This document shows, one piece after another, positions 9,812-42,136 of a stretch of 64,000 bases of DNA. Position 1 is the stretch's first letter. Each line of letters opens with the position of its first letter. Source of the stretch: Styela clava (Eukaryota); the NCBI RefSeq assembly GCF_964204865.1, contig NC_135261.1, forward strand, positions 18,600,001-18,664,000, in the 5' to 3' direction. The notes under the pieces were generated by a model. The model was not told the DNA's origin. It ran no database searches and saw nothing but the letters and a program-made list of their open reading frames with translations. Both the position numbers and the translations under genes were made by a program.

Positions 9812-9953
9812 GAGTGAAAGACAGTGAAAAAGCCGTCATTGACTTCGTGAATCGTACTTCCAATGAAATTTCTTGGTTGAAAATTTGAAAAAAAAACTCT
9901 GTTTTTCGAATGCAATTTTAAAAATAAACTCTTAAATCCAATATTCTGACACA

Positions 9954-12431
9954 ATGAAGATACTGGTTGTTTTGTGTTGTTTCGTAGTTGCAGGTAAGAT
10001 AAAAGTTTTCATAATTACACTATCTGTTTTAAATTTGATAAGCATTATCAAAATTATCGAGACTATAATAATATTCAAATATTCCCATAATTCAAACAAT
10101 CAAAAGCTTATAACCTAAAAACTTCAGTATTAGTGTTTTTTCAATCTTATTGAAACAACAAACAGATAATTAAAGATTTTGAATTTTGTTCATTTCCAGC
10201 CGTGATGGCTGACACCATTTATGCTGCCCCTTGGATATTACAAACGAGTATATTAAATTTCGCACAAGGTTGAATCAACAGAAAATGTTAATGATTATAT
10301 TCTTCTCAGTATCTTCATATGGGGGAGAGAGGAGACAATATTTTCAGTGGGGAAGCGGAAACAAAGGTATTTACTTTTTGTTTAGTTTATCAAGAAAGGT
10401 AAGTCAACATAAAAATTGATGCTTCTACATTAGTGATTTCTATACAAAATTTCTATCTGTTCAAAAACAACAATCATGCTCTTTAAATGAATTGATAACA
10501 CGATAATGACACTGAATATATTTTTCAAAAGATAACTTTGGACCAAAATCATTTGGAGACGGCCTTAGACGTAGAACAAACGGATGGAGAACAAGTAAAC
10601 CAGTTTTGTTTATGCGTAAACGTCTACAAGAAAGAACAAAATTTGCACCAGAAATACCAATACCCTATCGACCAAGTCTGTTTAAACGTTCTCCTCCAGG
10701 CATTATGATCAAAAAACAGGATACACCTGAACCATTGTGGCAGCGAGCTCTAAAAATTCTCTTCAACATAAATAGCAACAAATACCGGCCGAGACCATTT
10801 GGTATTCCGGGGGATGATGATAAAAGTAGACTTGGACAACTTTGGCGCCGAGTGGATGTTGTTAGAAATCGACCCGGGCCATTTGGACGTCGAGGAGATG
10901 GAGGCAGACTAGGGCCTTTTAGGCGACAAGGAGATGACGATGGTTATGAACCTGGACCTTTTCAACGTAGAGAATATGGTGATAGAGGTGGACTTGGACC
11001 TTTCGGGCGTAGAGGAATTGTGAATAGACTGGGACCTTTCGGGCGTGGAGGAGTTGTGAATAGACCTAAACCTTTCGGGCGTAGAGGAGATAATGATGGA
11101 GATAGACCTCGACCTTTTTGGAGCAGAGGTGATAATGGTAAAGATAGACCTAGACCTTTCGGACGTAGAGGAGATTATGTCGGAGATAAACCTAGACCTT
11201 TTTGGAGTAGAGGAGATAATGATGGAAATAGACCTGGGACTTTCTGGAGTAGAAAAATTAGTGACGAAGACAGGCTTGAACCTTTTGGACGACGAGAACA
11301 TGGTGATGGTGATAGACCTAGATCTTTTTGGAGTATAAGAGATAAGGATGGAGATAGACCAGTACCTTTTGGACGTGGAGGAGATAATGGTAGGGATAGA
11401 CCTGGACCTTTCGGACGTCGAGAAGATGGAAATAGGCCAGGGCCTTTTGGACGCCGAAGAGATGGCGATGAAGATAGACCTGGACTTTTTAGGCGTAGAG
11501 GAGATGGTGGTAGAGATAAACCTGAAAAATTCAATTTTGATGATAATTCCAGAAAGTTTAAAGAATGCAATAAACAATGTGAATCATTAGACGAATGTTT
11601 CGGCAAAAAAGACTTTAAAAAAATTATGATGATTGCTCCTAAACCTTGCAAGACATGTGTGATGAAAGAATGTGAATTTAAAACGAGTAAGTGTATATTT
11701 ATTCTATAATTTTCTTTTAGCAAAATGTCCAACTCAGATTTTATAAATAAACGAGGCGAAACATTGATTTTTACCAGATTTGAAATGCTTTTTCTGTTTT
11801 TTCACATGAAGCATATTATTGTTAATTCAATTTTTCGCGATCAAAATCTATTGATCTAAAATTTACTGCTGTTTCATAAAGTCAGATTGTGATAGGTTAT
11901 ATTCATTATATTTTTTTAGATCGTCAATGCTTTGTGGATTCCCATGCAACGTGCAGTGACATCTGCCCGAAAATATCACCTGATAAAGTCAAGGATAAAA
12001 TTTCCTCATGTGCATCATGTATCAATAAATGCGAAGCGGAAGGTATTTTTTTATATTTATTTCTTTTATCACCTGATGTTGCAATTGTCGAAGAAGCTTG
12101 ACCAAAGATGAGAGATTTGAATCTTTTACAGAAATATGAAAGTTTAATCATTCAAGCCATCATAACCAACTAAAACTACTCTAAATATGACATTATTTTA
12201 ATTGGAACAACTTTTTATAAAGATGACAACCAGAAAACTAAGGATGACAGTGAAGGCTACGAAGAAAACGGCACAAATGGAGTCGATGATGACGTGGAAA
12301 GCGAAGATCATGGCGATGCCCACGATGACGGAGCTGAGGCAGACAACGAAGATTGGCCAGAAAAGGAAGATGATAATGATGAGATAACCCCTGAGATGAT
12401 TTTGGCAATATTCAATAAGTTGCTATCCTAA
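9954..12431 (+). CDS. Gene A1: intact secreted RPGPF/RGD-repeat, Cys-rich (vanabin-like), acidic-tail protein, ~527 aa
   Basis: Exons 9954-9993, 10310-10366, 10532-11686, 11920-12042, 12223-12431, all GT-AG and phase 1, join in frame. Signal peptide MKILVVLCCFVVAVSSYG; repeat array; 12 Cys across exons 3-4; Asp/Glu tail; AATAAA at ~12444. Confidence 0.88.
10870..11525 (+). repeat. Coding 42-bp (14-aa) minisatellite in A1 exon 3
   Basis: Repeating AGACCT(G/A)GACCTTT(C/T)(G/T)GG..GTAGAGGAGAT units, translated RPxPF(G/W)(R/S)RGD. Confidence 0.9.
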
Positions 12432-18130: not shown

Positions 18131-18132
18131 AG

Positions 18133-18168: not shown

Positions 18169-18299
18169 TGATAAACGACAGTGAAAAAGCGATTGTACTC
18201 AATTGTTAAATCGTATTTTTATTGATTTGCTCGGTTGAAAAAAAACTCGTATGTCGACAGCTATTTGTGATAAACTCAAAAATACAATATTCTGAAATA

Positions 18300-21200
18300 A
18301 TGAAGATACTGGCTGCTTTGTGCTGTTTCGTGGTCGTAGGTAAGATAAATTTTTAAATAAGTTATCATATTGTTTTAAATATAATAAGCAAAATTCAAAT
18401 TCATACGACTATAACGACTATATAAATATCCAAATATTCCAATAATTCAAAGAATCAAAAGCTCATTACTTAAAAAGTTTAGTATTAGTGTCATGCCTTT
18501 CCAATTTTAAAAAAAGAATCCTATTGAAAATGCAGTTGATTAAGGATTTTGAGTTTTGTACATGGCTAGTTCCAACAAGTATAATAGAAAACTTTAATAT
18601 TTATCTTCTTCTCAGTATCTTCATATGGTGGAGAGAGGAGACAATATACTCAATTGGGAATAGGAAACAGAGGTATTTACTTTTGTGTTTTATTTGTCAG
18701 AAATAGTAACGAAAGAAAAGGAATTCAACATAATAATTAATGCTTCTTTATCAGCGATTTCTGTACCAAATTTCTATTGGTTCAAAAACAACAATCATAT
18801 TCTTGACGTGGAATTGATTACATGATAATGACGCTAAATATATTTGTTCAAAAGATAACGTTGGACCAAAATCATTTGGATACGGCCTTAGACGAGAAGC
18901 ATACGGATGGAGAACAAGTAAACCAGTTTTGTTCATGCGTAAACGTATACAAGAAAGAGCAAGATCCGCACCGAAAATACCAATCCCCTATCGACCAAAT
19001 CTGTTTAAACGTTCTCCCCCAGGCATTATGATCAAAAAACAGGATAAACCATAACCAATATGGCAGCGAGCTGTAAAAATTCTTTTCGGCATGAATAGCA
19101 ACAAATACCGACCGAGACCATTTGGTATTCCTGGGAATGATGACAAAAGTAGACTTGGACCATTTTGGCGCCGAGTAGATGTTGATAGAAAACCCTGGCC
19201 ATTTGGACGTCGTGGAGATGAAGGCAGACTAGGGCCTTTTAGGCGACCAGGAGATGGCGATGGTGATAGACCTGGACCCCTTCGACGTAGAGAATATGGT
19301 GATAGAGATAGACCTGGATCTTTCTGGCGTAGAGGAGATGGTGATAAAAATGGACCTGGACCTTCCGGGCGTAGAAGAGATGATGATGGAAATAGACCTG
19401 GACCTTTCGGTGGTAGAGGAGATGGTGATGGAAATAGACCTGGACCTTTCGGGCGTATAGGAGATGGTGATAGAAATAGACCTGGACCTTTCGGGCGTAT
19501 AGGAGATGGTGATAGAAATAGACCTGGACCTTTCGGGCGTATAGGAGATGGTGATAGAAATAGACCTGGACCTTTCGGGCGTAAAGGAGATGGTGATGGA
19601 AATAGACCTGGACCTTTCGGGCGTATAGGAGATAGTGATAGAAATAGACCTGGACCTTTCGGGCGTATAGGAGATGGTGATAGAAATAGACCTGGACCTT
19701 TCGGGCGTATAGGAGATGGTGATGGAAATAGACCTGGACCTTTCGGGCGTATAGGAGATGGTGATAGAAATAGACCCGGACCTTTCGGGCGTATAGGAGA
19801 TGGTGATAGAAATAGACCCGGATCTTTCGGGCGTATAGGAGATGGTGATGAAAATAGACCTGGACCTTTCGGGCGTAGAGAAGATGATGATGGAAATAGA
19901 CCTGGACCTTTCGGGCGTAGAGGAGATAATGATGGAAATAGACCTGGACCTTTCGGGCGTAGAGAAGATGATGATGGAAATAGACCTGGACCTTTCGGGC
20001 GTAGAGGAGATGATGATGGAAATAGACCTGGACCTTTCGGGCGTAGAGGAGATGATGATAGAAATAGACCTGGACCTTACGGGAGTAGAGGAGATGATGA
20101 TGGAAATAGACCTGGACCTTTCGGACGTAGAGGAGATGATGATGGAGATAGACCTGGACCTTTCGGTCGTAGAGGAGATGGCGATGGAAATAGACCTGGA
20201 CCTTTCGGTCGTAGAGGAGATGGTGATGGAAATAGACCTGGACCTTTCGGTCGTAGAGGAGATGATGATGGAGATAGACCCGGACCTTTCGGTCGTAGAG
20301 GAGATGATGATGGAGATAGACCTGAACTTTTTGGGCGTAGAGGAGGTGGTGATGGAAATAGACCTGGACCTTTCGGTCGTAGAGGAAATGGTGATGGAAA
20401 TAGACCTGGACCTTTTGGACGAAGAGAAGATGGTGCTAGACCTGGATCTTTTGGACGTAGTGGAGATGGTGATGGAGGTAGACCTGGACCTTTTGGACGT
20501 AGTGGAGATGGTGATGGAGATAGAACTGGATCTTTTGGACGTAGAGGAAGTGGTGACAGAGATAGACCTGATATTTCCGGGCGTAGAGGATATGGTGATA
20601 GATATAGACCTGGACCTTTTAGGCCCAGAGGGGATGATGATGGAAAGAACTTTGGAAACATTATGATGAGAATTCTGAAAGTGATACATAAAACCTTCGG
20701 AAAAAAAGAAAATGTTGAAGAAACAAATAACAAAAAATGCAAAAAGCAATGTGAAGCAAAGGAAAATTGCTTTGGAAGAAAAGATTTTGAAAAAATGATG
20801 ATGCTGTCGCCCAAACATTGCAAAGCATGCATGATGAAAGAATGCCAATTTAATATGGGTATAATTTTTTATCACAAACTTGAATATTTTTATATTTCAA
20901 TACTATGCTGAAACTTCTTTCACTTTAGAATCAAACTTAAATAATAAGTTAGAGAATACTTGTTTATTGAATATAAAACTCATCAGTAAGTTTCAAATAA
21001 TCGGTTCCAATTTCGGTATGACTTCCGTAATGTTGTGTATGCCAAACAAAATGTTAACAACGTTAATGTTCTATTTTTTCATATGTTCCAGATCGTAAAT
21101 GTTTCATGGATGCTCACAAGAAATGTGACAACATTTGCCCAGTATTATCACAAGAGAAAGTCGAGAATAAAACGTCCTTTTGTAAAACATGCATTGAAAA

Positions 21201-22007
21201 ATGTGAAGCAGAAAGTAAGTAATTGGTTGTAATATTCTTTTTTCTATTATAATAGAATGAATAACACATTCAACTTATTTGCCGTTTTACAATTTTATAG
21301 CAGGAAATATAATTCTTTTTGCATATTTAATCAAATTGTGAGTTTGAACAGATCTAATTCATTTCTATTTTCAGTTAATAAGAAACAAGAAAACTGTCTA
21401 ACTTTTTTTAAGTAGGCTATTCACGAGGAATACGTAAATTATCAAATTTCTTCACCAGAGTTCAATGTCCATGAAATATATATGTTATTTATAACCCTAA
21501 ATGCAAATGTACCATGTAACCTCTTTCAGAAGTGGTACATATAAAATACATCACCGAAAAATCCAGAACTTGTAGAAATTATAAATTAAGCATAACCAAT
21601 TGAACGTACTTTGGATATTGCGGTTGGCAAAAATTGTTCAGATTCATAACGATAAAATGTTTACTTTGTTTATGCAATCCTGAGCAGACGAACTTACCTA
21701 TGGCAATGACGGAAAAGCATTTGTTTATATAATAAATAGGTATAAAAATATGTAATGATCCCATATTAACAAAATTATTTTGTGCAAAGAGGTCAATGAA
21801 GACGATGATGACATGCCGGAGGATGAAGATACAATCGACGATATCTCAAAAAAGGAAGATCTAGAAGATGATAGCCATGATGGAAATGATGAAACCGCAA
21901 GTGAAATAGAAGTTAGCGATGAAGATGAAGTTGGAAATGATGAGATGACTTCTGATGATATAATGTCAACTACGGGTGGTGATATGGCATCGGATTCTGA
22001 TGAATAA
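18300..22007 (+). pseudogene. Gene B1: paralog with premature stop in exon 3
   Basis: Exons 18300-18339, 18616-18672, 18855-20858, 21092-21214, 21790-22007. In-frame TAA at 19052-19054 where B2 has GAA; the rest of the frame is open. Confidence 0.82.
19180..20645 (+). repeat. Coding 42-bp minisatellite in B1 exon 3
   Basis: Over 30 units of GGAGATGxTGATGGAAATAGACCTGGACCTTTCGGxCGTA(G/T)A; a 5' block of nine units reads GRI instead of GRR. Confidence 0.92.
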
Positions 22008-24419
22008 TAATTCCGATTCAGCGACGAACGTTTTCTCTCTGGAACAGTTTTAAAATATTCAAATATATCTAAAATTGTTATGTAAACTACCTAAAAAGGT
22101 TGGAGCATTAATGTGTTGAGAAAATGTGCTAATAAAACCGTATAACCAATGACCTAAAAGATTATTTCGAAATTTTTATGCTGTTGCTACAGTCGGATAG
22201 AACAATTCAGCACCAAGAAATATGTACTATAAATCATAATTTCGTTAGGTAACTTCCACAAAGAGTGAGTGACATCTTGTCAGATTTTTCTTTCAAGTAG
22301 ACTCACGACCAAGGTCGTAGCCTGACCAAAATTTGTGATTCGAATTTTAATTAGAAGCTTAACACGGTCTACGATATCACCCCCTGAAAAATAAAACGGC
22401 ACGATTAGCTTCGAGTCAAGTCAATTTAAAAACTTTAAATCTCATCATTAAAATAAATTCAATTCATAGTGTTTTTCGTAACATAAAACAAATTATCATA
22501 ACATCAACCTGACTACATGAGGAACTACCCACACAAGTTCATTCGTCGCTTTCGCAGGTTGAGATAGTAGCCTAACTTTGAAATTGATATTATCGTCGTT
22601 GATCGGCTTTCAGGATGACAATGAAGAATGAATACATTGCTGAACGCAATAATGACTTGATCCGTTTCAAGCAAATCTAGCTAAAAACGCATAAGTCATA
22701 GAACAAAAAAAAAGAAAATTTAATTCGTGCGTTGAACCTTGTGTTCATGCAAGTAGGTGTCAACTGTGCCATTGCCTAAGTGTTGGTGTATGCTGAGAAA
22801 ATGACGTGCGAGAGTCTCACTGCAAATGGCGCAATTTCGCATACGCAGAATATCAAATATTTTTGCAACAAGCACTCATGTTGGGGACTGGATAGCACTA
22901 TGAAATTTCTTTGGTTTTATTCTGGTCCTATCTTTTGTCATACGTATATGACTCTCAACATGATGGATTATTGCACGATATACATGTACATGACTGCTAC
23001 TCAGACTAGATCCCAGGAAGAATTCCCATAGCCGGCGTTGAAGAATGATACTGAGAGAACGATATATATATATATCATCAAATTGTTTGCCTAATGCAGA
23101 TAGTTTCTTTTGTAATATTTGTATTGTCCAAGATGTCCATCACATGCACTCCCGAATTAAGCCATATTTTTTTAAATAAAATTGAAAATTTAAGTTGAGT
23201 TTAGGAAAGAAGAATGTTGGACATGAAATAACATATGGCGCAATTACAACTAATCTTTGATTGAGAGACCAATTATTCCATTTCAAATTTCTAACCTATT
23301 AAATTAAAGGGGTTAGTGACTAAGTTAGTTGTCTGGGTGCGTCTCTAAAATCGAGACTCATTTTGGGTAACGTTGGGCTACCTACCCAGTGCACTTGCTT
23401 ATCGATGAGGTTTGTTGAAAATAGTAAATTAAATAAATCATAAATTCGTTGTTGCTTAGATTAATTAGTATAGCTAAAAAATATTTTGGACATCAATTAC
23501 TATCCCGAATAAAAAATAATATATACAAATATCAGTCAAACCGATTTGATTCTGGAACGAGCTTTTGAAATTGAGCGAAAAAAAAATGAATATTAGTTCA
23601 AAAGTGAATGTCGAAGCCCTTGCCTAATGGTAAGATCGGCACTGGTGACAATGCAGATTCGAAATGAATATTCGGCACTTTTGCTTTTCGCTATTTACCG
23701 ACCCAATTGCTTTGAAAATTTCAGTGGTTAAAATTGTATTATTCGCTAGAAGGCTATGGGGTCTATGCGATTCGATTTCTTGTGTGGGAAGACGTCATCA
23801 AAATTAAAAATTGCGGCCCCCTTGGCGGTTCCGCAATCGCGTTAGTGGTCAAGCGACTGCGGTACAGTAATTCACTGTGACAGATTACATATACCCGTAC
23901 TAGTTCGTTTTGCTATTCGTGTCCATATTGGAGCATCGCCCTCTTGGTAAAAATTGTATTACTTCGTTTGCATATGATCTTCTGGAGTTTTATAAATAAC
24001 CAGAAAAAAAATGTACGCACACGACAAACATTCGCGTTCGAATAACGTTTATGCGCTATCGGCTATTTGATATTTAAAACAATTCAGATTGTATACAATA
24101 ACGTAGCTAACCGTTGACAATACTTGTGGGACATCCAATAGCAGAGACTTCGTTTCCCTACATTCGTAGCATTTTCGCCAATCTCAAATAGTGAGAAATT
24201 CGTTTTCGCAAAAATTCAAACGGAAGAAAAGATTCCACTTATGGTCTTATGCTAAAAGGATCTGTTTGTTTTACTTTTCAATGTAATTGCTGATTAACTG
24301 GTTTATAATATTTAGTTTGGCAAAATGTGCTATTCCTTCTGCCACGATTGACCCGCGTTTTTGAATTTGTATGCGTATATAAAATAGGTTATTTAAAAAT
24401 TTTCTTTCTACTTCACTCA

Positions 24420-27017: not shown

Positions 27018-27154
27018 TGGAGAACAGCGAAAAAGCGGTTAACCAATTCGTAAATCGTATTTTCAAAGAAATTTCTTTGTTGAACATTTGAAAAAAAACT
27101 CTGTTTATCGAATGTAATTTTGTGATAAACTCTAAAATCCAATATTCTGATGCA

Positions 27155-29970
27155 ATGAAGATACTGGTTGTTTTGTGTTGTTTCGTAGTTGCAGGTAAGA
27201 TAAATGTTTCAATAGGTTTTCATAATTAAACTATCAGTTTTAAATTTGATGAGCAATATCAAAAGTATCGCGACTATATAAATATTCAAATATTCCCATA
27301 ATTCAAACAATCAAAAGCTTACAACCTAAAAACTTCAATATTAGTGTCTTTTCAATCGTATTGAAACAACAGATAATTAAAGATTTTGAATTTTGTACAT
27401 GTCCAGCCGTGATGGCTGACAACATTTATGCTGCCCCTTGGATATTACAAACGAGTATATTGAATTTCGCATAAGGTAGAATCAACAGAAAATGTTAATG
27501 ATCATATTCTTCTCAGTATCTTCATATGGGGGAGAGAGGAGACAATATACTCAGTGGGGAAGCGGGAACAAAGGTATTTACTTTTTTGTTTTGTTCATTG
27601 ATAATTCAACATAAAAATTGATGCTTCTACATTAGTGATTTCTATACAAAATTTCTATCTGTTCAAAAACAACAATCATACTCTTTACATGGAATTGATA
27701 ACATGATAATGACACTGAATATATTTTTCAAAAGGTTACTTCGGACCACAATCATTCGGAGACGGCCTTAGACGAGGAACATACGTATTGAGAACAAGTA
27801 AACCAGTTTTGTTTATGCGTAAACGTCTACAAGAAAGAACAAAATCCGCACCAAAAATACCAATACCCTATCGACCAAGTCTGTTTAAACGTTCTCCTCC
27901 AGGCATTATGATAAAAAAACAGGATACACCTGAACCATTGTGGCAGCGAGCTCTAAAAATTCTCTCCAACATAAATAGCAACAAATACCGGCCCAGACTG
28001 GTTTTCCGGGGGATGATGATAAAAGTAGACTTGGACCACTTTGGCGCCGAGTGGATGTTGTTAGAAATCGACCGGGCCCATTCGGACGTCGAGGAGATGG
28101 AGGCAGACTAGGGCCTTTTAGGCGACAAGGAGATGGCGATGGTGTTAAACCTGGACCTTTTCAACGTAGAGAATATGGTGATAGAGATAGACTTGGACCT
28201 TTCGGGCGTAGAGGAGTTGTGAATAGACTTGGACCTTTCGGGCGTGGAGGAGATGGTGATGGAAATAGACCTGGACTTTTCGGGCGTAGAGGAGTTGTGA
28301 ATAGACTTGGACCTTTCGGGCGTGGAGGAGATGATGATGGAAATAGACCTAAACCTTTCGGGCGTAGAGGAGATAATGATGGAGATAGACCTCGACCTTT
28401 TTGGACCAGAGGTGATAATGGTAAAGATAGACCTAGACCTTTCGGACGTAGAGGAGATAATGACGGAGATAAACCTGGTCCTTTTTGGAGTAGAGGTGAT
28501 AATGATGAAGATCGACCTGGACTCTTCGGACGTCGAGGAGATAAGTATAGAAATAGACCTGGACCTTTCTGGCGTAGAGGATATAATGATAGAAATACAC
28601 CTGGACATTTCGAACGTCGAGTAGATAATGATGGAGATACCTCTGGACCTTTCTGGAGTAGAAAAAATATTGACGGAGACAGGCCTGAACGTTTTGGACG
28701 TCGAGGGGATGATGATGGAGGTAGTCCTAAACCTTTTTGGAGTAGAGGAGATAATGATGGAAATGGGCCTGGGACTTTCTGGAGTAGAAAAGATAATGAC
28801 GAAGACAGCCCTGAACCTTTTGGACGTCGAGAACATGGTGATGGTGATAGACCTAGACCTTTTTGGAGTATAAGAGATAAGGATGGAGATAGACCAGTAG
28901 TACCTTTTGGACGTGGAGGAGATAATGATATGGATAAACCTGGACCTTTCGGACGTCGAGAAGATGGAAATAGGCCAGGGCCTTTTAGACGCCGAAGAGA
29001 TGGCGATGAAGATAGACCTGGACCTTTCAGGCGTAGAGGAGATAGTGGTAGAGATAAACCTGAAAAATTCAACTTTGATGATAATTCCACAAAGTTTAAA
29101 GAATGCAATAAAAAATGTGAATCATTAGACGAATGTTTCGGCAAAAAAGACTTCGAAAAAATGATGATGATTGCTCCTAAACCTTGCAAGAAATGTGTGA
29201 TGAAAGAATGTGGATTCAAAATGAGTAAGTGTATATTTATTCTATAATTTTCTATTAGCAAAATGTCCAACTCAGATTTTATAAATAAACGAGGCGAAAC
29301 ATTGATTTTTACCAGATTTGAAATGCTTTTTCTGTTTTTTCACATGAAGCATATTATTGTTAATTCAATTTTTCGCGATCAAAATCTATTGATCTAAAAT
29401 TTACTGCTGTTTCATAAATTCAGATTGTGATAGGTTATATTCATTATCTTTTTTTTAGATCGTCAATGCTTTGTGGATTCCCATGCAACGTGCAGTGACA
29501 TCTGCCCGAAAATATCACCTGATAAAGTCAAGGATAAAATTTCCTCATGTGCATCATGTATCAATAAATGCGAAGCGGAAGGTATTTTTTTATATTTATT
29601 TCTTTTATCACCTGATGTTGCAATTGTCGAAGAAGCTTGACCCAAGATGAGAGATTTGAATCTTTTATAGAAATATGAAAGTTTAATCATTCAAGCCATC
29701 ATAACCAACCAAAACTACTCTAAATATGACATTATTTTAATTGGAACAACTTTTTATAAAGATGACAACCAGAAAACTAAGGATGACAGTGAAGGTTACG
29801 GAGAAATCGACACAAATGGAGTCGATGATGACGTGGAAAGCGAAGATCATGGCGATGCCCACGGTGATGGAGCTGAGGCAGACAACGATGATTGGCCAGA
29901 AAAGGAAGATGATAATGATGGGATAACCCCTGAGATGATTTTGTCGATATTCAATAAGTTGCTATCCTAA
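27155..29970 (+). pseudogene. Gene A2: paralog with frameshift in exon 3
   Basis: Exons 27155-27194, 27517-27573, 27735-29224, 29459-29581, 29762-29970. A 4-nt deletion near 27998 (AGACTGGTTTT vs A1 AGACCATTTGGTATT) shifts the frame to a stop at 28109-28111. Confidence 0.82.
28065..29062 (+). repeat. Coding 42-bp minisatellite in A2 exon 3, longer than in A1
   Basis: Same unit family as A1 with roughly eight additional units. Confidence 0.9.
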
Positions 29971-32639: not shown

Positions 32640-35600
32640 AAATCCCATACCAGAAGTGCAAATTGAAGAAAGTCGGCAATTTAATTAATAAGCACCGTGC
32701 TATTTTGGTCCAACCATCACGTGAGTCGATGACGATTTGAACAGATTATGACGTTATAGAAAACGCGGGAGATTTGAATTCGTTTCCAGCATACGGGCGT
32801 ACTATCCGCAGTTTATTTATACCCTATCATGAGAGTGTCGTTTTAAAAACCAAAACAAGGATTCGAATAAATTGAAGCTAAAGATATTTTATTTATAGAT
32901 AGCTCTTTTCAATCAAATATTGTGGGTCTATTTTAGGACATTTTAGCGTGGGTTTTGGTGCAAATTTCTAACTAGCATTTCAACTATATATTTTTGGAGT
33001 GTATTTCTTATTGGTTAATTCAAACTTTCAAATTTCGTTTCGTGTATAATTTATTATGATTTCACACGAGATATCTATAGTGGACTTAATGGCAAGCGAA
33101 TACGACTATTGCTAAAATTAGTATAGTGACAGCGTTGTATTAATTAGTCGAATAAACGAAAGTCAACGCCATACTTATTTTTAAAATATGTTTTAACATT
33201 ACTAAGGTTATCACACACCATTTTCGATCACCTATACTCATTTCATCGATCCGACACCATTGCAGGTCTGCCATAAATTAGACAAACAACAGAATTGTTC
33301 GACTATACTGAGAAACCCCGACATCGTATTCAAGAGGTCATTGGTAACATATAATAAATGTAAACAAAAAGTGCGTGCATGTTATTTTTGTACACTCATT
33401 TACGGTTTTTATTTACGAAACTCTAGCAAACGTTATTGTATAAAGTTTACTAATTGGTTCCTTCAGTATGACTCCTAAACATTGCACGCAATGTTAACAA
33501 AATATTCTTATTGGTTAGTTTGATAACCCTCGAATATTCAATCACGACGAAATAACTTGAACTAATCTTGATTAGCTCGGAGACGCGTTTACAACTAAAT
33601 GGAACCATCTTGACGTCAAATAATATTTTATACCAGGTTTTAAATTTAAACACAATCTTATAGTCTGGGAAACGTATTTTTATAAATGAAAAAAAAAATA
33701 CATAAGTAAGTCGAGAATTTAAATATTGTGCACCGTGATATTTTAGATCAACACCAGTGAGTCGACGATGATATGAACGGATCATGAAGTAAATAAAAAC
33801 ATGGGAGATTTAAATTCGTTTGCAGCATACAGGCGTACGACCCTCAGTTTAATTTTGGCTTTTTATCAGAATTTCATTTTGAAAACCAAAACAAAGAGTC
33901 GAATCAATTAGGCTAAGGCTATTCTATTTATGGATAGTTATTTTCGATCAAATAGGTGGGTCTATTTTAAGACATATTACCGGCGTGTTTTTGTGAATAT
34001 TTCTGACTAGCATTTCAGCTATATATTTTTGGAGTGGTATAGTGACTATACTGAGAAACTCTGACACCGTATTCAGGGGGTCATTGATAAAATATAATAA
34101 TATAATAAAGGTAAACAAAAATGTACGTACATGTTATTTTTGTACACTTTTACGCTTTTCTTTGCGAAACTCTATCAAAAGTTATTTTTAAAAGTTCTCT
34201 GATTGGCTCTTTTGGGATGAGTAATTAACAAAATGGCGGTGCTTTATTTCAACATCTTTTTCTAAATATATCAGACAAACAGGATAAAAATTTCAATCCA
34301 TTAAATTTATTACTTAGTTTACAAAGCTAAATTTAGCCATTATTATTGGTTAGGTTGATAACCTTCGAATATTCAAACACAAAACAAGATAATTTGAGCT
34401 AATCTTGATCAGCTTGGAGATGTGTTTGAATATAGATCCATCTTGACGTCATGGAAATATTTAATATCAAGTTTCGAATGTAAACACAGCATCAAAACAA
34501 GAGTTGATTTACTACACTGGAATTCACTACCGAAACTGCATATTGAAGTAACTCGACAATTTAATTATGATGAACCCTCATATTTCGGTCCAAAATCACA
34601 TGAGTCGATGTCGATATGAGCAGCGGATCATGACGTAAATAAAAGCGCGGAAGATTTAAATTCGTTTGCAGCATACAGGCGTTCTACCCGTAGTTTAATT
34701 ATAGTTTATATCATAGTATAGTTTAAAAATCAAAACAAGAATGCGAAGTAATTAAAGTTATTCTATTCATAGATAGTTGTTTATAATCAAATGTGCTGTC
34801 TTATTTAAGACATATTAGTGGCGTATTAGTATCGGTGAATTTCTGTAGCTAGGATTTTAATGATCTAATTTTGGATTGATGTTTCCTATTGGTGAAATCA
34901 AACTTTAAATTTTTTTCCCTTGTATAGGATCGCTATAAAAGATATCAACGTTGTATTCATGAGTAAAATATTTATTTTAAAATAAAATGTATCATTACTA
35001 AGATTATCACACACCATTTTTAATAAGTATATCTGGTTATATATCATATGTACTGCAAATCATATTTACAGTCATGTATATTTCACCATCGTGATCGCAA
35101 AAAATGTGATTCGGATTTTTATATATGCATGCAAATTTAATTGTGACCACCAGGCCATGTAAAATGAACAAAACAAAAATGAATTACTAAGTACAAATGA
35201 AGCCAGGGTAAACACAAGTGAAATTTTGGATAAAATATCACCTTCGACGACCAAAAAACTATAAAAGCAATAGCAGTGTAGCGGCCTTTCCCATCTTCAA
35301 GAACGGGAAACCTGAAGTAATTAGGTAGACAAGAAAACGATTAATTTCACATAAAAGGTGACAAAAAATTTGATATTCATATTGGCTTCAAAAAACTGGG
35401 TGGACACTCATTTAAATTTATTGACCCGACACCATTGCCTTAAATCAGACAAACAACAGAATTTGTTCGACGCTATTGAGAAACCCTGACATTGTATTCA
35501 AAAAACATTCGTAAGATATAATAAAGTAAACAAAAAGTGCGTACATGCTATTTTGGTACACTCTGACGCTTTTCTTTACGAAACTCTAGCTAAAGTTATT

Positions 35601-35960
35601 TTAAAAAGTTTTCTCATTAGCTCTTTCATTATGACAATGCTCACAAAATGGCGACGCTATATCATTTCAATAACATTTTTCAAATATATCAGACAAATAA
35701 AATTTTAAACCGCTAAATGTACTACTTAGTTTAAATTTAGCTATTCTTTGTTATTGGTTAGTTTGATAACTCTCGAATATTCAAACACAAAACGAGATAA
35801 TTAAAGCTGACCTTGATGTAAATAGAACCATCCTGACGTCATCGTGATAACATTTAAGTTTTTCAACGTGAACACAAACTAATATAAATTCTACGAAATG
35901 TATTGATATAAATGAAAAAAAAAAATACATTTATTTTGGGCAACAAAACAAGTGTTGATT
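32640..35960 (+). repeat. Degenerate tandem array (3 units) upstream of gene B2
   Basis: Near-identical to 14830-18130; markers at ~32717, 33755 and 34597. Confidence 0.85.
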
Positions 35961-35963
35961 TAG

Positions 35964-35999
35964 TATAAATTAGGTCACTTGTGCACACTTGTCATCAGT
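35964..35999 (+). promoter_or_regulatory. Core promoter of B2
   Basis: TATAAAT at 35964, TGCACAC at 35982, TCAGT at 35995. Confidence 0.7.
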
Positions 36000-36129
36000 T
36001 GATAAACGACAGTGAAAAAGCGATTACTCAATTGTTAAATCGTATTTTTATTGATTTGCTCGGTTGAAAAAAAAAGTCGTTTGTCGACAGCTATTTGTGA
36101 TAAACTCAAAAATACAATATTCTGAAATA

Positions 36130-39100
36130 ATGAAGATACTGGCTGCTTTGTGCTGTTTCGTGGTCGTAGGTAAGATAAATTTTTAAATAAGTTATCATAT
36201 TGTTTTAAATATAATAAGCAAAATTCAAATTCAATAATTCAAAGAATCAAAAGCTCATTACTTAAAAAGTTTAGTATTAGTGTCATGCCTTTCCAATTTT
36301 AAAAAAAGAATCCTATTGAAAATGCAGTTGATTAAGGATTTTGAGTTTTGTACATGGCTAGTTCCAACAAGTATAATAGAAAACTTTAATATTTATCTTC
36401 TTCTCAGTATCTTCATATGGTGGAGAGAGGAGACAATATACTCAATTGGGAATAGGAAACAGAGGTATTTACTTTTGTGTTTTATTTGTCAAAAATAGTA
36501 ACGAAAGAAAAGGAATTCAACATAATAATTAATGCTTCTTTATCAGCGATTTCTGTAACCAAATTTCTATTTGTTCAAAAACAACAATCATATTCTTGAC
36601 GTGGAATTGATTACATGATAATGACGCTAAATATATTTGTTCAAAAGGTAACGTTGGACCAAAATCATTTGGATACGGCCTTAGACGAGAAGCATACGGA
36701 TGGAGAACAAGTAAACCAGTTTTGTTCATGCGTAAACGTCTACAAGAAAAAGCAAGATCCGCACCGAAAATACCAATCCCCTATCGACCAAATCTGTTTA
36801 AACGTTCTCCCCCAGGCATTATGATCAAAAAACAGGATAAACCAGAACCACTATGGCAGCGAGCTGTAAAAATTCTTTTCGGCATAAATAGCAACAAATA
36901 CCGGCCGAGACCATTTGGTATTCCGGGGAATGATGACAAAAGTAGACTTGGACCATTTTGGCGCCGAGTAGATGTTGATAGAAAACCCGGGCCATTTGGA
37001 CGTCGTGGAGGTGATGGCAGACTAGGGCCTTTTAGGCGACCAGGAGATGGCGATGGTGATAGACCTGGACCTCTTCGACGTAGAGAATATGGTGATAGAG
37101 ATAGACCTGGATCTTTCTGGCGTAGAGGAGATGGTGATAAAAATGGACCTGGACCTTCCGGGCGTAGAAGAGATGATGATGGAAATAGACCTGGACCTTT
37201 CGGTGGTAGGAGAGATGGTGATGGAAATAGACCTAAACCTTTCGGGCGTATAGGAGATGGTGATAGAAATAGACCTGGACCTTTCGGGCGTATAGGAGAT
37301 GGTGATGGAAATAGACCTGGACCTTTCGGGCGTATAGGAGATGGTGATAGAAATAGACCCCGACCTTTCGGTGATGGAAATAGACCTGGACCTTTCGGAC
37401 GTAGAGGAGATGGCGATGGAAATAGACCTGGACCTTTCGGTCGTAGAAGAGATGATGATAGAAATAGACCTGGACCTTTCGGGCGTAGAGGAGATGATGA
37501 TGGAAATAGACCTGGACCTTTCGGTCGTAGAGGAGATGGCGATGGAAATAGACCTGGACCTTTCGGTCGTAGAGGAGATGATGATGGAAATAGACCTGGA
37601 CCTTTCGGACGTAGAGGAGATGATGATGGAGATAGACCTGGACCTTTCGGTCGTAGAGGAGATGGCGATGGAAATAGACCTGAACCTTTCGGTCGTAGAG
37701 GAGATGGTGATGGAAATAGACCTGGACCTTTCGGTCGTAGAGGAGATGATGATGGAGATAGACCTGGACTTTTTGGGCGTAGAGGAGATAGTGATGAAAA
37801 TAGACCTGGACCTTTCGGTCGTAGAGGAGATGATGATGGAGATAGACCTGGACTTTTTGGGCGTAGAGGAGATGATGATAGAAATAGACCTGGACCTTTC
37901 GGACGTAGAGGAGATGATGATGGAGATAGACCTGGACCTTTCGGTCGTAGAGGAGATGGCGATGGAAATAGACCTGGACCTTTCGGTCGTAGAGGAGATG
38001 ATGATGGAAATAGACCTGGACCTTTCGGACGTAGAGGAGATGATGATGGAGATAGACCTGGACCTTTCGGTCGTAGAGGAGATGGCGATGGAAATAGACC
38101 TGGACCTTTCGGTCGTAGAGGAGATGGTGATGGAAATAGACCTGGACCTTTCGGTCGTAGAGGAGATGATGATGGAGATAGACCTGGACTTTTTGGGCGT
38201 AGAGGAGATGGTGATGAAAATAGACCTGGACCTTTCGGTCGTAGAGGAGATGATGATGGAGATAGACCTGGACTTTTTGGGCGTAGAGGAGATGGTGATG
38301 GAAATAGACCTGGACCTTTCGGTCGTAGAGGAAATGGTGATGGAAATAGACCTGGACCTTTTGGACGTAGAGAAGATGGTGCTAGACCTGGATCTTTTGG
38401 ACGTAGTGGAGATGGTGATGGAGGTAGACCTGGACCTTTTGGACGTAGTGAAGATGGTGATGGAGATAGAACTGGATCTTTTGGACGTAGAAGAAGTGGT
38501 GACAGAGATAGACCTGATATTTCCGGGCGTAGAGGATATGGTGATAGATATAGACCTGGACCTTTTAGGCCCAGAGGAGATGATGATGGAAAGAACTTTG
38601 GAAACATTATGATGAGAATTCTGAAAGTGATACATAAAACCTTCGGAAAAAAAGAAAATGATATAGAAACAAATAACAAAAAATGCAAAAAGCAATGTGA
38701 AGCAAAGGAAAAATGCTTTGGAAGAAAAGATTTTGAAAAAATGATGATGCTGTCGACCAAACATTGCAAAGCATGCATGATGAAAGAATGCCAATTTAAT
38801 ATGGGTATATATAATTTTTTATCACAAACTTGAATATTTTTATTTTTCAATACTATGCTAGAACTTCTTTTACTTTAAAGTCAAACTTAAATAATAAGTT
38901 AGAGAATACTTGTTTATTGAATATAAAACTCACCAGTAAGTTTCAAATAATCGGTTCCAATTTCGGTATGAATTCCGTAATGTTGTGTATTCCAAACAAA
39001 ATGTTAACAACGTTAATGTTCTATTTTTTCATATGTTCCAGATCGTAAATGTTTCATGGATGCTCACAAGAAATGTGACAACATTTGCCCAGTATTATCA

Positions 39101-39957
39101 CAAGAGAAAGTCGAGAATAAAACGTCATCTTGTAAAACATGCATTGAAAAATGTGAAGCAGAAAGTAAGTAATTGGTTGTAATATTCTTTTTTCTATCAT
39201 AATAGAATGAATAACACATTCAACTTATTTGCCGTTTTACAATTTTATAGCAGGAAATATAATTCTTTTTGCATATTTAATCAAATTGTGAGTTTGAACA
39301 GATCTAATTCATTTCTATTTTCAGTTAATAAGAAACAAGAAAACTGTCCAACTTTTTTTAAGTAGGCTATTCACGAGGAATACGTAAATCATCAAATTTC
39401 TTCACCAGAGTTCAATGTCCATGAAATATATATGTTATTTATAACCCTAAATGCAAATGTCCCATGTGATCTCTTCCAGAAGTGGTACATATAAAATACA
39501 TCACCGAAAAATCCCGAACTGGTGGAAATTATAAATTAAGCATAACCAATTTAACGTACTTTGGATATTGCGGTTGGCAAAAATTGTTCAGATTCATAAC
39601 GATAAAATATTTACTTTGTTTATGCAATCCTGAGCAGACGAACTTACCTATGACAATGACGGAAAAGCATTTGTTTATATAATGAATAGGTATAAAAATA
39701 TGTAATGATCCCATAGTAACAAAATTATTTTGTGCAAAGAGGTCGATGAAGACGATGATGACATGCCGGAGGATGAAAATACAATCGACGATATCTTAGA
39801 AAAGGAAGATCTAGAAGATGATAGCCATGATGGAAATGATGAAACCGCAAGTGAAATAGAAGTTAGCGATGAAGATGAAGTTGGAAATGATGAGATGACT
39901 TCTGATGATATAATGTCAACTACGGGTGGTGATATGGCATCGGATTCTGATGAATAA
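36130..39957 (+). CDS. Gene B2: intact secreted RPGPF/RGD-repeat, Cys-rich (vanabin-like), acidic-tail protein, ~864 aa
   Basis: Exons 36130-36169, 36408-36464, 36648-38804, 39042-39164, 39740-39957, all GT-AG and phase 1, in frame. Signal MKILAALCCFVVVVSSYG; ~23 RGD motifs by hand count; 12 Cys; acidic C-terminus; AATAAA at ~40079. Confidence 0.88.
36975..38590 (+). repeat. Coding 42-bp minisatellite in B2 exon 3 with internal 420-bp higher-order duplication
   Basis: About 38 units; 37501-37880 is almost identical to 37921-38300. Confidence 0.92.
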
Positions 39958-41285
39958 TAATTCCGATTCAGCGACGAACGTTTTCTCTCTGGAACAGTTT
40001 TAAAATATTCAAATATATCTGAAATTGTTGTGTAAAATACTTAAAAATGTTGGAGCATTAATGTGTTGCTAATATGCTAATAAAACCGTATAACAGAATA
40101 CAAAAGTGGAATGGTTTACTTACATATGTGTCCCTATTGAAACATAACGCGTTCACATGAGAATGATTGTCTAATTCTCATAGATTAATTTGGAGTCTTT
40201 GTGCTGTTGCCACAATTAAATAAAACAATTCCGCACCATGGAATATGTACTACAAATCATTTTTTCGTCAGGTAACTTAGACAAAAAGCGACTGATCTGT
40301 TGTAAGATTTGTCTTTTAAATCGACTCATGACCAAAGTCGTAGCCTGACCAAAATTTGGGATGGGGGCTAGTGATGTGACTTTTAATTTTAAGTAAAAGC
40401 TACATATGTTCTAGGATATCACCTCCTGAAAAATGAAGCGGCACAGTTAGTTTCGTAGTCAGGCTTATTCAACAACTATAAACCTACAAACATGAAGTCA
40501 TTGCTGAGCGCAATTACGTCTTGACCCGTTGCATGCTTGAACAACGGGTCGCTTATCCGGTCAAAAACACTTACGGTAAATCGTAACACAAAGAAGACGA
40601 ATATATAAATTGGTCGTTGGAGCTTGCGTACCTTAAATATTTAAAAAGCATTTAACCTCTGATTTATGCTATAAAGGGGTGAGGCCGCTAGATCATGCAG
40701 TGGTTTTAATATGGCCGCACAGTTCTTGACAAAGCGGTGGTAGTAACATACTAGACCAAGAAAAGATCGAAGTTTATTTGAAAAAGGAAACTTGTTGATT
40801 GTTTCAAACTTTGAAGTCAGTGAATAGATACCCTTCGATGTAACGTGATGGCCTAAAAAATCGATCTCTTTTTTCCCGAACTCACATTTATAAACATTCA
40901 AGACAAGTTCGTATTTTCGAAAGCGTAAGGAATGTTGTCTTAGTGCTTGCCGATGTTGTTCCTCAGTTTCGGTTGCACATAATATATCATCGAGGAATAC
41001 AAATATATTCTATAAACCAGAAGTTACTTCCGACAGAAAACGAGAAAATGATGAACAGGCATTGCACAGACCGAATCGTAAAATTACTGATTCAAACCTC
41101 CTTCAGGACAGATGAAAGCAGCTTTCTTCCTATTAGATTGATGAAGAGATATTTGATGATATGCTCTTAAAAGGTCACATTTGCTGAAATAGTGGCAATC
41201 ATGTAATTCATTGGTAAAATCGCGCATGTGAGGAATTGGCCATCTGTCTTTTATTGTCTGATTGTTAAGGGAAATATAGTCGACT

Positions 41286-42136
41286 TTAACGATTTTGAAA
41301 AATTTACCTCATTGCGTTGTATTTAAAGTATTTTGTTAGAAAACTGATAGAGGTTTTTCTAATTTTTTTATGTGATTGGTAAGGAAATGAATCCAGCTAT
41401 TCATACCCAAAATATTTTTTGAGCCCCAAAAACGAATCTTTCTCAAATTTTGTGTCAATTTGGGAAAATTTACGTTATCGCGTTCTGTTGGATGTATTTT
41501 GTTGGAAAACTGATCGAGTTTTTTTCCAATTTTTTTTATCTGATCAAAAAGATGGTGAAACCAGCTATCCGTGCCTATAATATTTTTTGAGCCCCAAAGA
41601 CGGATATTTTTCAAATTTTGGGTCAATTTAACGATTTTGGAAAATTTACGTTATTGCGCTGTATCAAAAATATTTTGTTACAAAACTGATCGAGTTTTTT
41701 TCCAATTTTTTTACATGATTGGAAAGAAAATGAATCCAGCTATCTATGACTAAAATATATTTTGAGCCCCAAAGACCGATCTTCTTCAAATTTTAGGTCA
41801 ATTTAACGATTTTGGAAAATTGACGTTATTGCGTTGTATTTGAAGTATTTTGTTCGAAAACTGTTTGAGTTTTTTTCCAATTTTCTTTTTTGATTGAAAA
41901 GGAAATTCATCCAGGTATTCATACCCAAAATATTTTATGAGCCCCAACGACGAATCTTCTTAAATTTTGAGTCAATTTAACGATTTTGTAAAATTTACGT
42001 TATTGCGTTGTATTTAAAAGTATTTTGTTAGAAAACTGATCGAGTTTTTTTTCCAAATTCTTTACATGATTGGAAAGGAAAGGAATCCAACTATCCATAC
42101 CCAAAATATTTTTTGAGCCCCAATGACCGATCTTCT
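41286..42136. repeat. ~175-bp tandem repeat, ~5 copies, inserted in Gypsy pol
   Basis: Unit TTTAACGATTTTGGAAAATTTACGTTATTGCG...GAAAACTGATCGAG...TTTTGAGCCCCAA recurs at ~41286, 41458, 41627, 41802 and 41976. Confidence 0.9.

What the first reader, a model, noticed from the sequence alone, without database searches (positions are those of the whole stretch)
37380..38345. RGD motif overlaps the convertase/amidation site: a possible proteolytic switch
Seen: the unit reads ...RPGPF-G-R-R-G-D-D-D-G-N, so G-RR and R-G-D share the second Arg; B2 has ~23 RGDs. Known: X-Gly-Arg-Arg is the prohormone convertase/carboxypeptidase/PAM signal for amidated peptides, and RGD is the integrin-binding motif. Inference: the uncut protein is a highly multivalent integrin ligand, while cleavage after RR destroys each RGD and releases ~20 near-identical peptides such as GDDDGNRPGPF-NH2. 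One sequence would then have two mutually exclusive activities.
Basis: partly seen in the sequence, partly recalled or inferred. Interest (0 to 1): 0.85.

Follow-up and report, generated by a model that had tools for sequence, protein, structure and literature searches.

The report
Secreted tunicate repeat polyprotein with FGRRGD units
A sea-squirt-type (tunicate) genome carries a private cluster of expressed genes for secreted proteins built from dozens of copies of a 14-residue unit in which a peptide-cutting and amidation signal (Phe-Gly-Arg-Arg) overlaps a cell-adhesion motif (Arg-Gly-Asp); the overlap is real, but the sequence evidence favours a peptide precursor with an incidental RGD over a designed two-state switch.

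Summary
Window 37380-38345 encodes 23 in-frame 14-residue units, and 21 of them read F-G-R-R-G-D. Gene B2 as a whole has 23 RGD and 29 GRR.

The gene is real. RNA contigs splice five exons with GT..AG introns, giving an 864-codon frame: signal peptide, basic N-region, about 40 units, an amphipathic helix ending F-G-K-K, two 6-Cys modules and an acidic tail.

B2 belongs to a cluster of at least seven loci on one chromosome of a tunicate genome (a GT2-GH6 cellulose-synthase gene is present). No relatives were found anywhere else.

- Across 183 units in six paralogs the two motifs separate: both 32%, RGD only 14%, G-dibasic only 21%, neither 33%.
- In the oldest, non-homogenised units a basic pair survives in 83%. 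RGD survives in 20%, about the 22% that shuffling the unit gives.
- The 23 RGDs are few independent events, because a 10-unit block was duplicated recently (96.6% identity).

Best reading (confidence about 0.4): a multi-copy precursor cut at FG-RR to give about 24 peptides ending RPGPF-amide, with RGD as a passenger. An intact polyampholyte matrix protein (0.3) and the true switch (0.1) are not excluded.

The parts
35964..35970 (+). TATAAAT box upstream of B2 (inferred promoter element)
   Evidence: Read directly from the sequence. RNA contig coverage begins by 36034. The surrounding 334 bp is 96% identical upstream of B1 and 74-80% identical upstream of A1, A2 and C.
36034..36169 (+). B2 exon 1: 5' UTR and ATG at 36130; encodes the hydrophobic signal-peptide start M-K-I-L-A-A-L-C-C-F-V-V-V
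   Evidence: The RNA contigs of runs X1 and X2 join 36169 to 36408 across a GT..AG intron. Mean Kyte-Doolittle hydropathy of residues 3-13 is 3.3. A homologous exon lies upstream of A1, B1, A2 and C.
36408..36464 (+). B2 exon 2 (end of the signal peptide and start of the pro-region)
   Evidence: GT..AG joints flank it on both sides in X1 and X2. It is 86-100% identical in the paralogs.
36648..38804 (+). B2 exon 3: basic N-region, repeat array, amphipathic helix and first 6-Cys module (718 full codons, 36650-38803)
   Evidence: Joints at 36464/36648 and 38804/39042; ORF listed.
36650..36994 (+). Basic N-region (pI 11.4), the part best conserved between the A, B and C paralogs; its RKR, KR and KK pairs are invariant
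   Evidence: Alignment A1 gives 84% and 72% identity; composition.
37042..38592 (+). 42-bp (14-residue) tandem array with consensus R-P-G-P-F-G-R-R-G-D-x-D-G-N
   Evidence: TRF reports 37.4 copies at 84% matches.
37380..38345 (+). Regular core of the array (the finding): 23 units, 21 reading FGRRGD, built from a duplicated 10-unit block
38594..38653 (+). Cationic amphipathic stretch ending in a second F-G-K-K signal (B and C types only)
   Evidence: Translation. It is conserved in B1, C and the pseudogene copy.
38670..38804 (+). First 6-Cys, Lys-rich module
   Evidence: Translation. Found at 53-94% identity at seven loci of the genome. No Pfam or PDB match.
39042..39164 (+). B2 exon 4: second 6-Cys module
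   Evidence: Joints 38804/39042 and 39164/39740. tblastn finds the equivalent exon in A1, A2, B1, C, D and the pseudogene.
39740..39957 (+). B2 exon 5 coding part: 71-residue acidic tail (34 Asp+Glu, pI 4.05) and TAA stop; an AATAAA lies at 40079-40084
   Evidence: The joint is seen in X2. Sequence, composition.
9885..12041 (+). Paralog A1 (exons 1-4 found); its array mixes FGRRGD and FWSRGD units
18205..22142 (+). Paralog B1 (exons 1-5); nine FGRIGD units; carries a TAA in the N-region in this assembly
27051..29580 (+). Paralog A2 (exons 1-4); the frame shifts just before the array in this assembly

Best explanation
B2 is one member of a tunicate-private tandem gene family that encodes secreted polyproteins of about 864 residues.

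Most likely mechanism, with what is shown and what is inferred:
1. The protein enters the secretory pathway through its signal peptide. The splicing, and a hydrophobic N-terminus that reads as a signal peptide, are shown.
2. In a cell with a regulated secretory pathway, each F-G-R-R is cut after the second Arg by a subtilisin-like proprotein convertase. This is inferred.
3. A carboxypeptidase removes the two Arg, and the exposed Gly is converted to a C-terminal amide by peptidylglycine alpha-amidating monooxygenase. This is inferred.
4. The result would be about 24 nearly identical 11-residue peptides of the form G-D-x-D-x-x-R-P-G-[P/L]-F-amide. A further amidated cationic helix would come from the F-G-K-K site.
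5. The Cys modules and the acidic tail would act as carrier or packing parts.

On this reading RGD exists because the acidic spacer begins Gly-Asp directly after the second Arg. It was then copied by repeat amplification rather than kept as an integrin ligand.
For: - Gene structure. Spliced, expressed gene with a signal-peptide exon.
- Processing signals. 26 of about 41 B2 units carry [FWYL]-G-basic-basic, and 29 carry G-dibasic. A second F-G-K-K signal follows the helix in the B and C types.
- Position conservation. In B and C arrays Gly6 is 86-94% and Arg7 is 89-97% conserved. The core R-P-G-P-F is more constant than spacer positions 11, 13 and 14.
- Codon changes. Changes at Phe5 (50 silent, 23 replacing) and at Gly6 in B2, B1 and C (51 silent, 12 replacing) are mostly silent. 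At Gly3 (17/47), Gly9 (17/44) and Gly13 (13/96) they are mostly replacing.
- Old units. In the 35 most diverged units a basic pair persists in 83% but RGD in 20%, against 22% by chance.
- Machinery. FGRRGD is the commonest junction in five of the six paralogs and second, 8 against 9 FGRIGD, in B1. Convertase P-domains and PHM/DBH-type copper monooxygenase domains are in the genome.
- Precedent. F-G-R-R followed by acidic residues is the processing signal of CCK, gastrin and cionin precursors (established knowledge, from memory).
Against: - In the A and D paralogs 28-43% of units have Trp in place of the amide-donor Gly and 21-24% have Ser in place of Arg7. Only 25-39% of their units carry G-dibasic, so those genes cannot be simple 11-mer precursors.
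- A fast-changing cluster of seven loci with broken copies is unusual for neuropeptides, as are two Cys modules and a 71-residue acidic tail.
- No orthologue was found in any other organism.
- The silent/replacing counts count units, not mutations. They are inflated by the 10-unit duplication.
- With 3-4 basic residues per unit, an adjacent basic pair is expected by chance in 40-67% of units (own calculation).
- The cell type of expression is unknown, and no peptide data exist.
Confidence: 0.4

Rival explanations
1. The array is not cut. The protein is secreted whole as a disordered, charge-balanced (polyampholyte) matrix, glue or granule-condensing protein. Arg, Asp and the regularly spaced Phe/Trp drive self-association. 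The Cys modules cross-link it, and RGD may or may not engage cells.
For: - The array has 121 Lys+Arg against 100 Asp+Glu. It is 29% Gly and 13% Pro, with one aromatic residue per unit.
- Units that lose Arg7 (FWSR) gain Lys13, and FGRIGD units gain Arg13, as read from the sequences.
- RGD is kept in FWSRGD units that have no cleavage signal.
- F-G-R-R lacks the Arg at P4 that furin needs, so a non-endocrine cell would leave it intact (established knowledge).
- Fast-evolving clustered families with Cys-rich ends are typical of secreted structural and adhesive proteins.
Against: - Gly6-Arg7 are held more tightly than the other Gly positions in the B and C arrays, which a purely compositional role does not predict.
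- A second F-G-K-K signal sits after the helix.
- The charge compensations were inherited as amplified blocks, so they are few events.
- There is no similarity to any known structural protein.
Confidence: 0.3
2. The same product is used in two states: uncut as a highly multivalent RGD ligand for a PS2-type integrin, and cut as a source of amidated peptides. The convertase decides which.
For: - The overlap is exact in 21 of 23 core units and arises in only 1.2% of shuffled units.
- FGRRGD is the commonest junction in five of the six paralogs and second, 8 against 9 FGRIGD, in B1, so it is probably ancestral.
- G-R-R-G-D is a working integrin ligand context in human LAP-beta1 (PMC2173277).
- Ascidians have one alpha integrin in the RGD-binding clade (PMC1145181), and integrin beta genes are present here.
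Against: - RGD is not kept above chance in diverged units: 20% against 22%.
- The motifs are uncoupled in 35% of all units, and 33% have neither.
- Asp10 shows 1 silent against 44 replacing changes.
- The reading needs two separate unproven activities, plus regulated partial processing.
Confidence: 0.1
3. A polyprotein of host-defence or deterrent peptides, made in blood cells or tunic cells rather than neurons. The array, the cationic helix and the Cys modules would each be released as separate effectors. This resembles insect apidaecin-type multi-peptide precursors, or tunicate clavanin/styelin precursors with their anionic tails.
For: - Clustered, rapidly diversifying family with pseudogenes.
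- A cationic amphipathic helix followed by Gly and then an anionic C-terminal tail. This matches the layout of clavanin and styelin precursors (from memory).
- Transcripts are present in all four runs of one study and absent from four runs of two other studies of the same species, which suggests tissue- or state-specific expression.
Against: - The predicted 11-mers are net acidic, unlike known antimicrobial peptides.
- No sequence similarity to any such family.
- The identity of the runs is coded, so the tissue is unknown.
Confidence: 0.15

Closest known systems
Multi-copy amidated neuropeptide precursors (cnidarian Antho-RFamide, molluscan and insect FMRFamide, TRH precursors); the F-G-R-R-plus-acidic signal of CCK, gastrin and cionin
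   Same: Signal peptide, then many tandem copies of a short conserved core, each followed by Gly and two basic residues and separated by acidic spacers. Tens of copies per precursor. (Recalled from established knowledge.)
   Different: - No sequence relation.
- Seven fast-diverging clustered paralogs rather than one conserved gene.
- About half the units of the A and D paralogs lack the signal.
- Extra 12-Cys region and long acidic tail.
- No orthologue outside this genome.
RGD ligands regulated by nearby proteolysis (osteopontin RGD beside the thrombin site; TGF-beta1 LAP G-R-R-G-D-L-A-T-I)
   Same: An RGD adjoining basic residues in an exposed, flexible extracellular segment. The GRRGD string itself binds integrin alpha-v beta-8 in LAP (PMC2173277).
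   Different: Those are single sites in folded or well-studied proteins, and their specificity depends on flanking residues (L-A-T-I) that are absent here. Here there are 21-23 copies followed by Asp or Gly, and no binding evidence.
Sea urchin SpTransformer (Sp185/333) proteins
   Same: A clustered, rapidly diversifying, lineage-private family of secreted disordered proteins with Gly-rich repeats and an RGD motif (papers listed; not read in depth).
   Different: No sequence similarity. SpTransformer has one RGD and a His-rich region; it has no dibasic or amidation periodicity and no Cys modules.
Vanabins (ascidian Cys- and Lys-rich metal-binding proteins)
   Same: Lys-rich helical segments with closely spaced Cys pairs (C-x2-5-C) in a tunicate protein.
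   Different: Neither Cys module matches Pfam or any PDB chain at E<=1 to 10, including vanabin2. Here there are 12 Cys in two exon-sized modules, not 18. Only the separate exons were tested.

Membership tests
Multi-copy amidated peptide precursor (prohormone type) | N-terminal signal peptide | tested here: met
   Exon 1 encodes M-K followed by an 11-residue hydrophobic run (mean hydropathy 3.3). RNA contigs join it to the array exon. No dedicated signal-peptide predictor was available.
Multi-copy amidated peptide precursor (prohormone type) | Each peptide copy followed by Gly plus a basic pair | tested here: inconclusive
   Met in B2 (71% of units) and C (84%). Only 25-49% in D, A1, A2 and B1.
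Multi-copy amidated peptide precursor (prohormone type) | Peptide core and processing residues more constrained than the spacer | tested here: met
   In B and C arrays positions 1-8 are 62-97% conserved, against 29-72% for the top residue at positions 11, 13 and 14. Changes at Phe5 and Gly6 are mostly silent. The counts are inflated by block duplication.
Multi-copy amidated peptide precursor (prohormone type) | Mature amidated peptides detectable; expression in cells with a regulated secretory pathway | not testable with these tools
   Only assembled RNA contigs of coded runs were available. There are no peptide data and no paper mentions the core sequence.
Multi-copy amidated peptide precursor (prohormone type) | Processing enzymes encoded in the genome | tested here: met
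   P_proprotein domains at about 8 loci. Cu2_monooxygen domain exons at 46 places. PAM was not told apart from DBH-like genes.
RGD-dependent integrin ligand | RGD in an extracellular, accessible segment | tested here: met
   Secreted protein. RGD sits in a Gly/Pro/charged repeat with no Cys. Disorder is inferred from composition, not computed.
RGD-dependent integrin ligand | RGD conserved beyond what the surrounding sequence and chance give | tested here: not met
   RGD is present in 46% of 183 units. In units under 80% identical to any other unit it is 20%, against 22% in shuffled units. Many C-type units have R-G-Y instead.
RGD-dependent integrin ligand | RGD-sensitive binding to an integrin of the same animal | not testable with these tools
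   Integrin beta genes exist at 4 or more loci. An RGD-clade alpha chain is known in Ciona (PMC1145181) but was not searched for here.
Vanabin | Sequence match to the Pfam vanabin model or to the vanabin2 structure | tested here: not met
   No Pfam family at E<=1 and no relevant PDB chain at E<=10 for either Cys module. The modules were tested exon by exon only.
Collagen-like triple helix | Uninterrupted Gly-X-Y with Gly every third residue | tested here: not met
   The unit has G-P-F, G-R-R and G-D-x, and then breaks. A 14-residue period is not a multiple of three (read directly).

The most novel reading that the evidence does not exclude
The FGRRGD unit is a true two-state element. Secreted uncut, the array is a 20-fold multivalent integrin ligand that clusters receptors on the animal's blood or epithelial cells. 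Cut by a convertase, every RGD is destroyed and about 24 amidated RPGPF peptides with a different target are released. One tunicate-private gene would then encode two mutually exclusive signals selected by proteolysis.
Probability: 0.1. Interest if true: 0.8.

Novelty: new variant of a known kind. Interest (0 to 1): 0.45.

Why it matters
If the array is processed, this is an undescribed family of amidated peptides in the closest living relatives of vertebrates. It would be made from an unusual precursor that also carries Cys modules and an acidic tail, and it is diversifying in a seven-locus cluster. That would make it a good system for studying how new peptide signals arise by repeat amplification.

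If it is secreted whole, it is a new charge-balanced, RGD-studded repeat protein of possible interest for tunic, adhesion or blood-cell biology and for biomaterials.

Either way, the family offers natural unit variants that separate the two motifs (FWSRGD, FGRRGY, FGRIGD). This makes the switch idea cheaply testable.

Tried and rejected
Homology searches, all blank or chance:
- Word-indexed search with the whole of B2 exon 3, and with its N-region alone: no hit.
- phmmer of A1 exon 3 against 1.84 billion representatives gave four hits, all in the repeat region. P0001-P0003 are unrelated Ser/Pro/His-rich repeat proteins. P0004 is a 75-residue metagenome fragment with 14-residue units containing S-R-G-D-N. 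It is a single-member cluster on a 1.1-kb contig and too weak to call.
- Pfam, PDB sequences and the ESM Atlas (twice): nothing.
- Metagenome scan with an N-region alignment: 590 pattern matches, none confirmed.
- Rfam on the window: nothing.
- Literature: no paper holds the core RPGPF in a relevant sense.

- The look-up of sequencing runs and read laying allow one call each, so the paralogs and the tissue of origin could not be examined. Run names are coded.

Readings rejected:
- Coding on the minus strand or in the other frames: splice orientation and the signal peptide fix the frame.
- Collagen-like helix: the period is 14.
- Furin substrate: there is no Arg at P4.
- Enrichment of dibasic sites in the N-region as evidence for processing: about 4 are expected by chance from its 24% basic content.

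Left out by rule: the joined (spliced) protein was never searched, folded or printed.
Full report
**What is there.** The window is AT-rich eukaryotic DNA with about 30-41% G+C. Tandem Repeats Finder reports four arrays of a 42-bp unit, at 10929-11524, 19249-20646, 28138-29062 and 37042-38592. Each lies inside a long + strand ORF; I label them A1, B1, A2 and B2. In the flagged stretch 37380-38345 the frame reads 23 units of 14 residues. B2 as a whole has 23 RGD, 29 GRR and 21 GRRGD.

**Is it more than chance?**
- Against shuffles of the array's own residues the counts are far out: RGD 22 against 6.2 +/- 2.3, and GRRGD 21 against 0.4.
- The copies are not independent. The core is a 420-bp block of ten units duplicated at 96.6% identity, and single units are 90-93% alike.
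- The honest figure is per unit. A shuffled unit contains RGD 22% of the time, G-dibasic 15%, and the overlapping GRRGD 1.2%. One unit with a mildly unusual overlap has been amplified.

**The gene is real and secreted.** One call each of the look-up of sequencing runs and read laying was available.
- Two runs, guessed to be RNA, hold contigs that skip 36170-36407, 36465-36647, 38805-39041 and 39165-39739. All are GT..AG on the + strand. A DNA-type run of the same species covers the introns.
- This gives five exons: 36034-36169 (ATG at 36130), 36408-36464, 36648-38804, 39042-39164 and 39740 onward (stop at 39955-39957).
- The coding length is 2595 nt, or 864 codons plus the stop. One search counted from 36131; the ATG is at 36130.
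- Exon 1 encodes M-K followed by eleven hydrophobic residues, which reads as a signal peptide.
- Exon 3 encodes a basic N-region (pI 11.4), the array (121 basic and 100 acidic residues, 29% Gly), a cationic amphipathic stretch ending F-G-K-K, and six Cys.
- Exon 4 adds six more Cys. Exon 5 encodes a 71-residue tail with 34 Asp+Glu.
- The long ORFs in other frames and on the minus strand are side effects of a repeat unit without stop codons.

**Organism and family.**
- The assembly is 377 Mb, and the window lies on contig 16 at 18.60 Mb.
- A GT2 domain lies 2 kb upstream of a GH6 domain on the same strand of contig 9. This fused arrangement is the hallmark of tunicate cellulose synthase (established knowledge), so the genome is very probably a tunicate's.
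- Searching the genome with the N-region and with the first Cys module finds only one cluster, on contig 16 between 18.555 and 18.640 Mb. It holds A1, B1, A2 and B2; two further intact genes upstream, which I call C (L019:2414-4366) and D (L017:2834-4936); and a broken copy on the minus strand.
- All types share the signal-peptide exons, the large exon and a second Cys exon. The B and C types share the acidic-tail exon, and the A type has an acidic exon of its own.
- Nothing related was found outside this genome. No paper contains the core sequence.

**What the paralogs say about the two motifs.** I aligned every array to the cyclic consensus R-P-G-P-F-G-R-R-G-D-D-D-G-N.
- In the B and C types Gly6 is 86-94% and Arg7 is 89-97% conserved. 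Gly9 is 82-90% and Asp10 is 82-87%.
- In the A and D types Gly6 falls to 41-56% (Trp 28-43%) and Arg7 to 51-75% (Ser 21-24%). Arg8-Gly9-Asp10 stay at 50-80%.
- Over 183 units, both signals occur in 32%, RGD alone in 14% (mostly FWSRGD), G-dibasic alone in 21% (FGRRGY, FGRRED, FGRRRD) and neither in 33% (for example FGRIGD, nine copies in B1).
- The overlap is therefore ancestral: FGRRGD is the commonest junction in five of the six paralogs and second, 8 against 9 FGRIGD, in B1. But it is not maintained as a unit.
- Homogenisation hides selection, so I looked at the 35 units that are under 80% identical to any other unit of their gene. These are mostly the array edges. They keep a basic pair in 83%, G-dibasic in 40% and RGD in 20%, which is the chance level.
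- Two cautions apply. Several of these edge units are shared between paralogs, so the effective number is nearer 15. With 3-4 basic residues per unit, a basic pair is already expected in 40-67% (own calculation).

**Codon level.**
- Departures from the commonest codon are mostly silent at Phe5 (50 silent, 23 replacing) and at Gly6 in B2, B1 and C (51 against 12).
- They are mostly replacing at Gly3 (17/47), Gly9 (17/44), Asp10 (1/44) and Gly13 (13/96).
- This points to constraint on Phe-Gly-Arg rather than on Gly-Asp. However, the counts are of units, not mutations, and the Gly6 codon variants mark sub-blocks of the 10-unit repeat. I give this modest weight.

**Mechanism.**
- If every G-dibasic site in B2 were used, exon 3 would yield 24 products of 11 residues plus Gly. 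Seven would be G-D-G-D-G-N-R-P-G-P-F, four G-D-D-D-G-D-R-P-G-L-F, three each of two further forms, and the rest singles.
- The site F-G-R-R followed by acidic residues is the classic convertase, carboxypeptidase and amidation signal, as in CCK, gastrin and cionin (memory).
- It lacks Arg at P4, so furin would not cut it. Processing would need PC1/3- or PC2-type enzymes in regulated secretory cells (established knowledge).
- The genome encodes P-domain convertases, PHM/DBH-type copper monooxygenase domains and integrin beta chains. An RGD-clade alpha integrin is known in Ciona (PMC1145181).
- GRRGD is a working integrin ligand in human LAP-beta1, though specificity there depends on the following L-A-T-I (PMC2173277).
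Neither is shown.

**Weighing the readings.**
- Peptide-precursor reading, confidence about 0.4. For it: the tight F-G-R-R in the B and C arrays, the second F-G-K-K site, the conserved core against variable spacer, and the persistence of basic pairs in old units. Against it: the A and D paralogs, where nearly half the units cannot be amidated or cut; the rapid turnover of the cluster; the extra Cys and acidic parts; and the lack of orthologues.
- Intact polyampholyte matrix or glue protein, 0.3. It fits the balanced charge and the regular aromatic residue, the retention of RGD in FWSRGD units, and the apparent charge compensation (Lys13 with Ser7, Arg13 with Ile8), although these were inherited as blocks.
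- Defence-peptide polyprotein, 0.15. It shares features with both readings above.
- The switch proper, about 0.1. It requires both activities plus regulated partial processing.

**Expression.** Transcripts occur in all four runs of one study and in none of four runs from two other studies of the same species. This suggests restricted expression, but the runs are coded and only contigs were served, so tissue, level and strand cannot be read.

**Verdict.** The proteolytic switch is a legitimate but unsupported hypothesis. The comparative data favour the cleavage and amidation half and give no sign that RGD is selected for. Interest is moderate.

Noticed in passing
window 19052 (B1) and about 28060-28110 (A2): In this assembly B1 has GAA changed to TAA in the conserved N-region, and A2 changes frame just before its array. 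The RNA contigs, and a DNA-run contig laid on B2, carry a third B-type haplotype. It mixes B1-like and B2-like letters but keeps GAA at the stop position. The breaks may therefore be allelic, or specific to the sequenced individual.
   Followed up: partly
L017:2834-4936, L019:2414-4366, L018:4225-7895 (G000 contig 16, 18.555-18.599 Mb): Three more family members lie just upstream of the window. D has A-like alternating FGRRGD/FWSRGD units and a different N-region containing its own amphipathic stretch. C has 15-residue units, many with R-G-Y. The third is a minus-strand copy with TGA stops.
   Followed up: partly
window 10606-22142 versus 27788-40090: The pairs A1+B1 and A2+B2 are a segmental duplication of about 17.8 kb. 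Identical 32-bp tandem repeats lie at 13500-13563 and 31267-31330, and near-identical 111-residue ORFs at 15640-15975 and 33450-33785.
   Followed up: no
window 6779-7018, 8105-8258, 15695-15893, 16477-16598, 33505-33703, 34288-34409: Partial copies (67-79% identity) of the B2 promoter-proximal 334 bp are scattered upstream of each gene, in addition to the true promoter copy next to each exon 1.
   Followed up: no
G000 contig 13 at 10.37-10.76 Mb, contig 5 at 9.1-21.0 Mb, and others: There are 46 exon-level matches to the copper type II monooxygenase domain (PHM/DBH family), many of them in tandem clusters. This is a striking expansion. Whether any are true amidating enzymes was not tested.
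   Followed up: no
G000 contig 9, 16177301-16180164: A GT2 domain and a GH6 domain lie 2 kb apart on one strand. This is the fused cellulose-synthase arrangement typical of tunicates, and I used it to place the genome.
   Followed up: yes
window 37042-38592, unit positions 10-14: The spacer reads D-x-D-x-[N/D], the 1-3-5 spacing of DxDxDG-type calcium-binding loops, though without the Gly at position 6. Asp12 is the most constant spacer residue (61-100%). Calcium binding by the array or by the released peptides is an untested possibility.
   Followed up: no
window 40641-40901 (-) and 41285-42136: A retrotransposon-like reverse-transcriptase fragment lies just downstream of B2, judged by eye only; Pfam gave no match for the 86-residue piece. 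It is followed by a 175-bp tandem repeat of 4.9 copies.
   Followed up: no
L018:2074-3816 (-): An intact 580-residue ORF sits beside the broken family copy. It has no Pfam match at E<=0.01 and its origin is unassigned.
   Followed up: partly
window 36034 (5' end of RNA contig record 8 of run X2): The 1191-nt RNA contig continues for about 450 nt upstream of 36034 with sequence unlike the window, and no AG acceptor is present there. It could be a chimeric contig, another haplotype's upstream region, or a further 5' exon.
   Followed up: no
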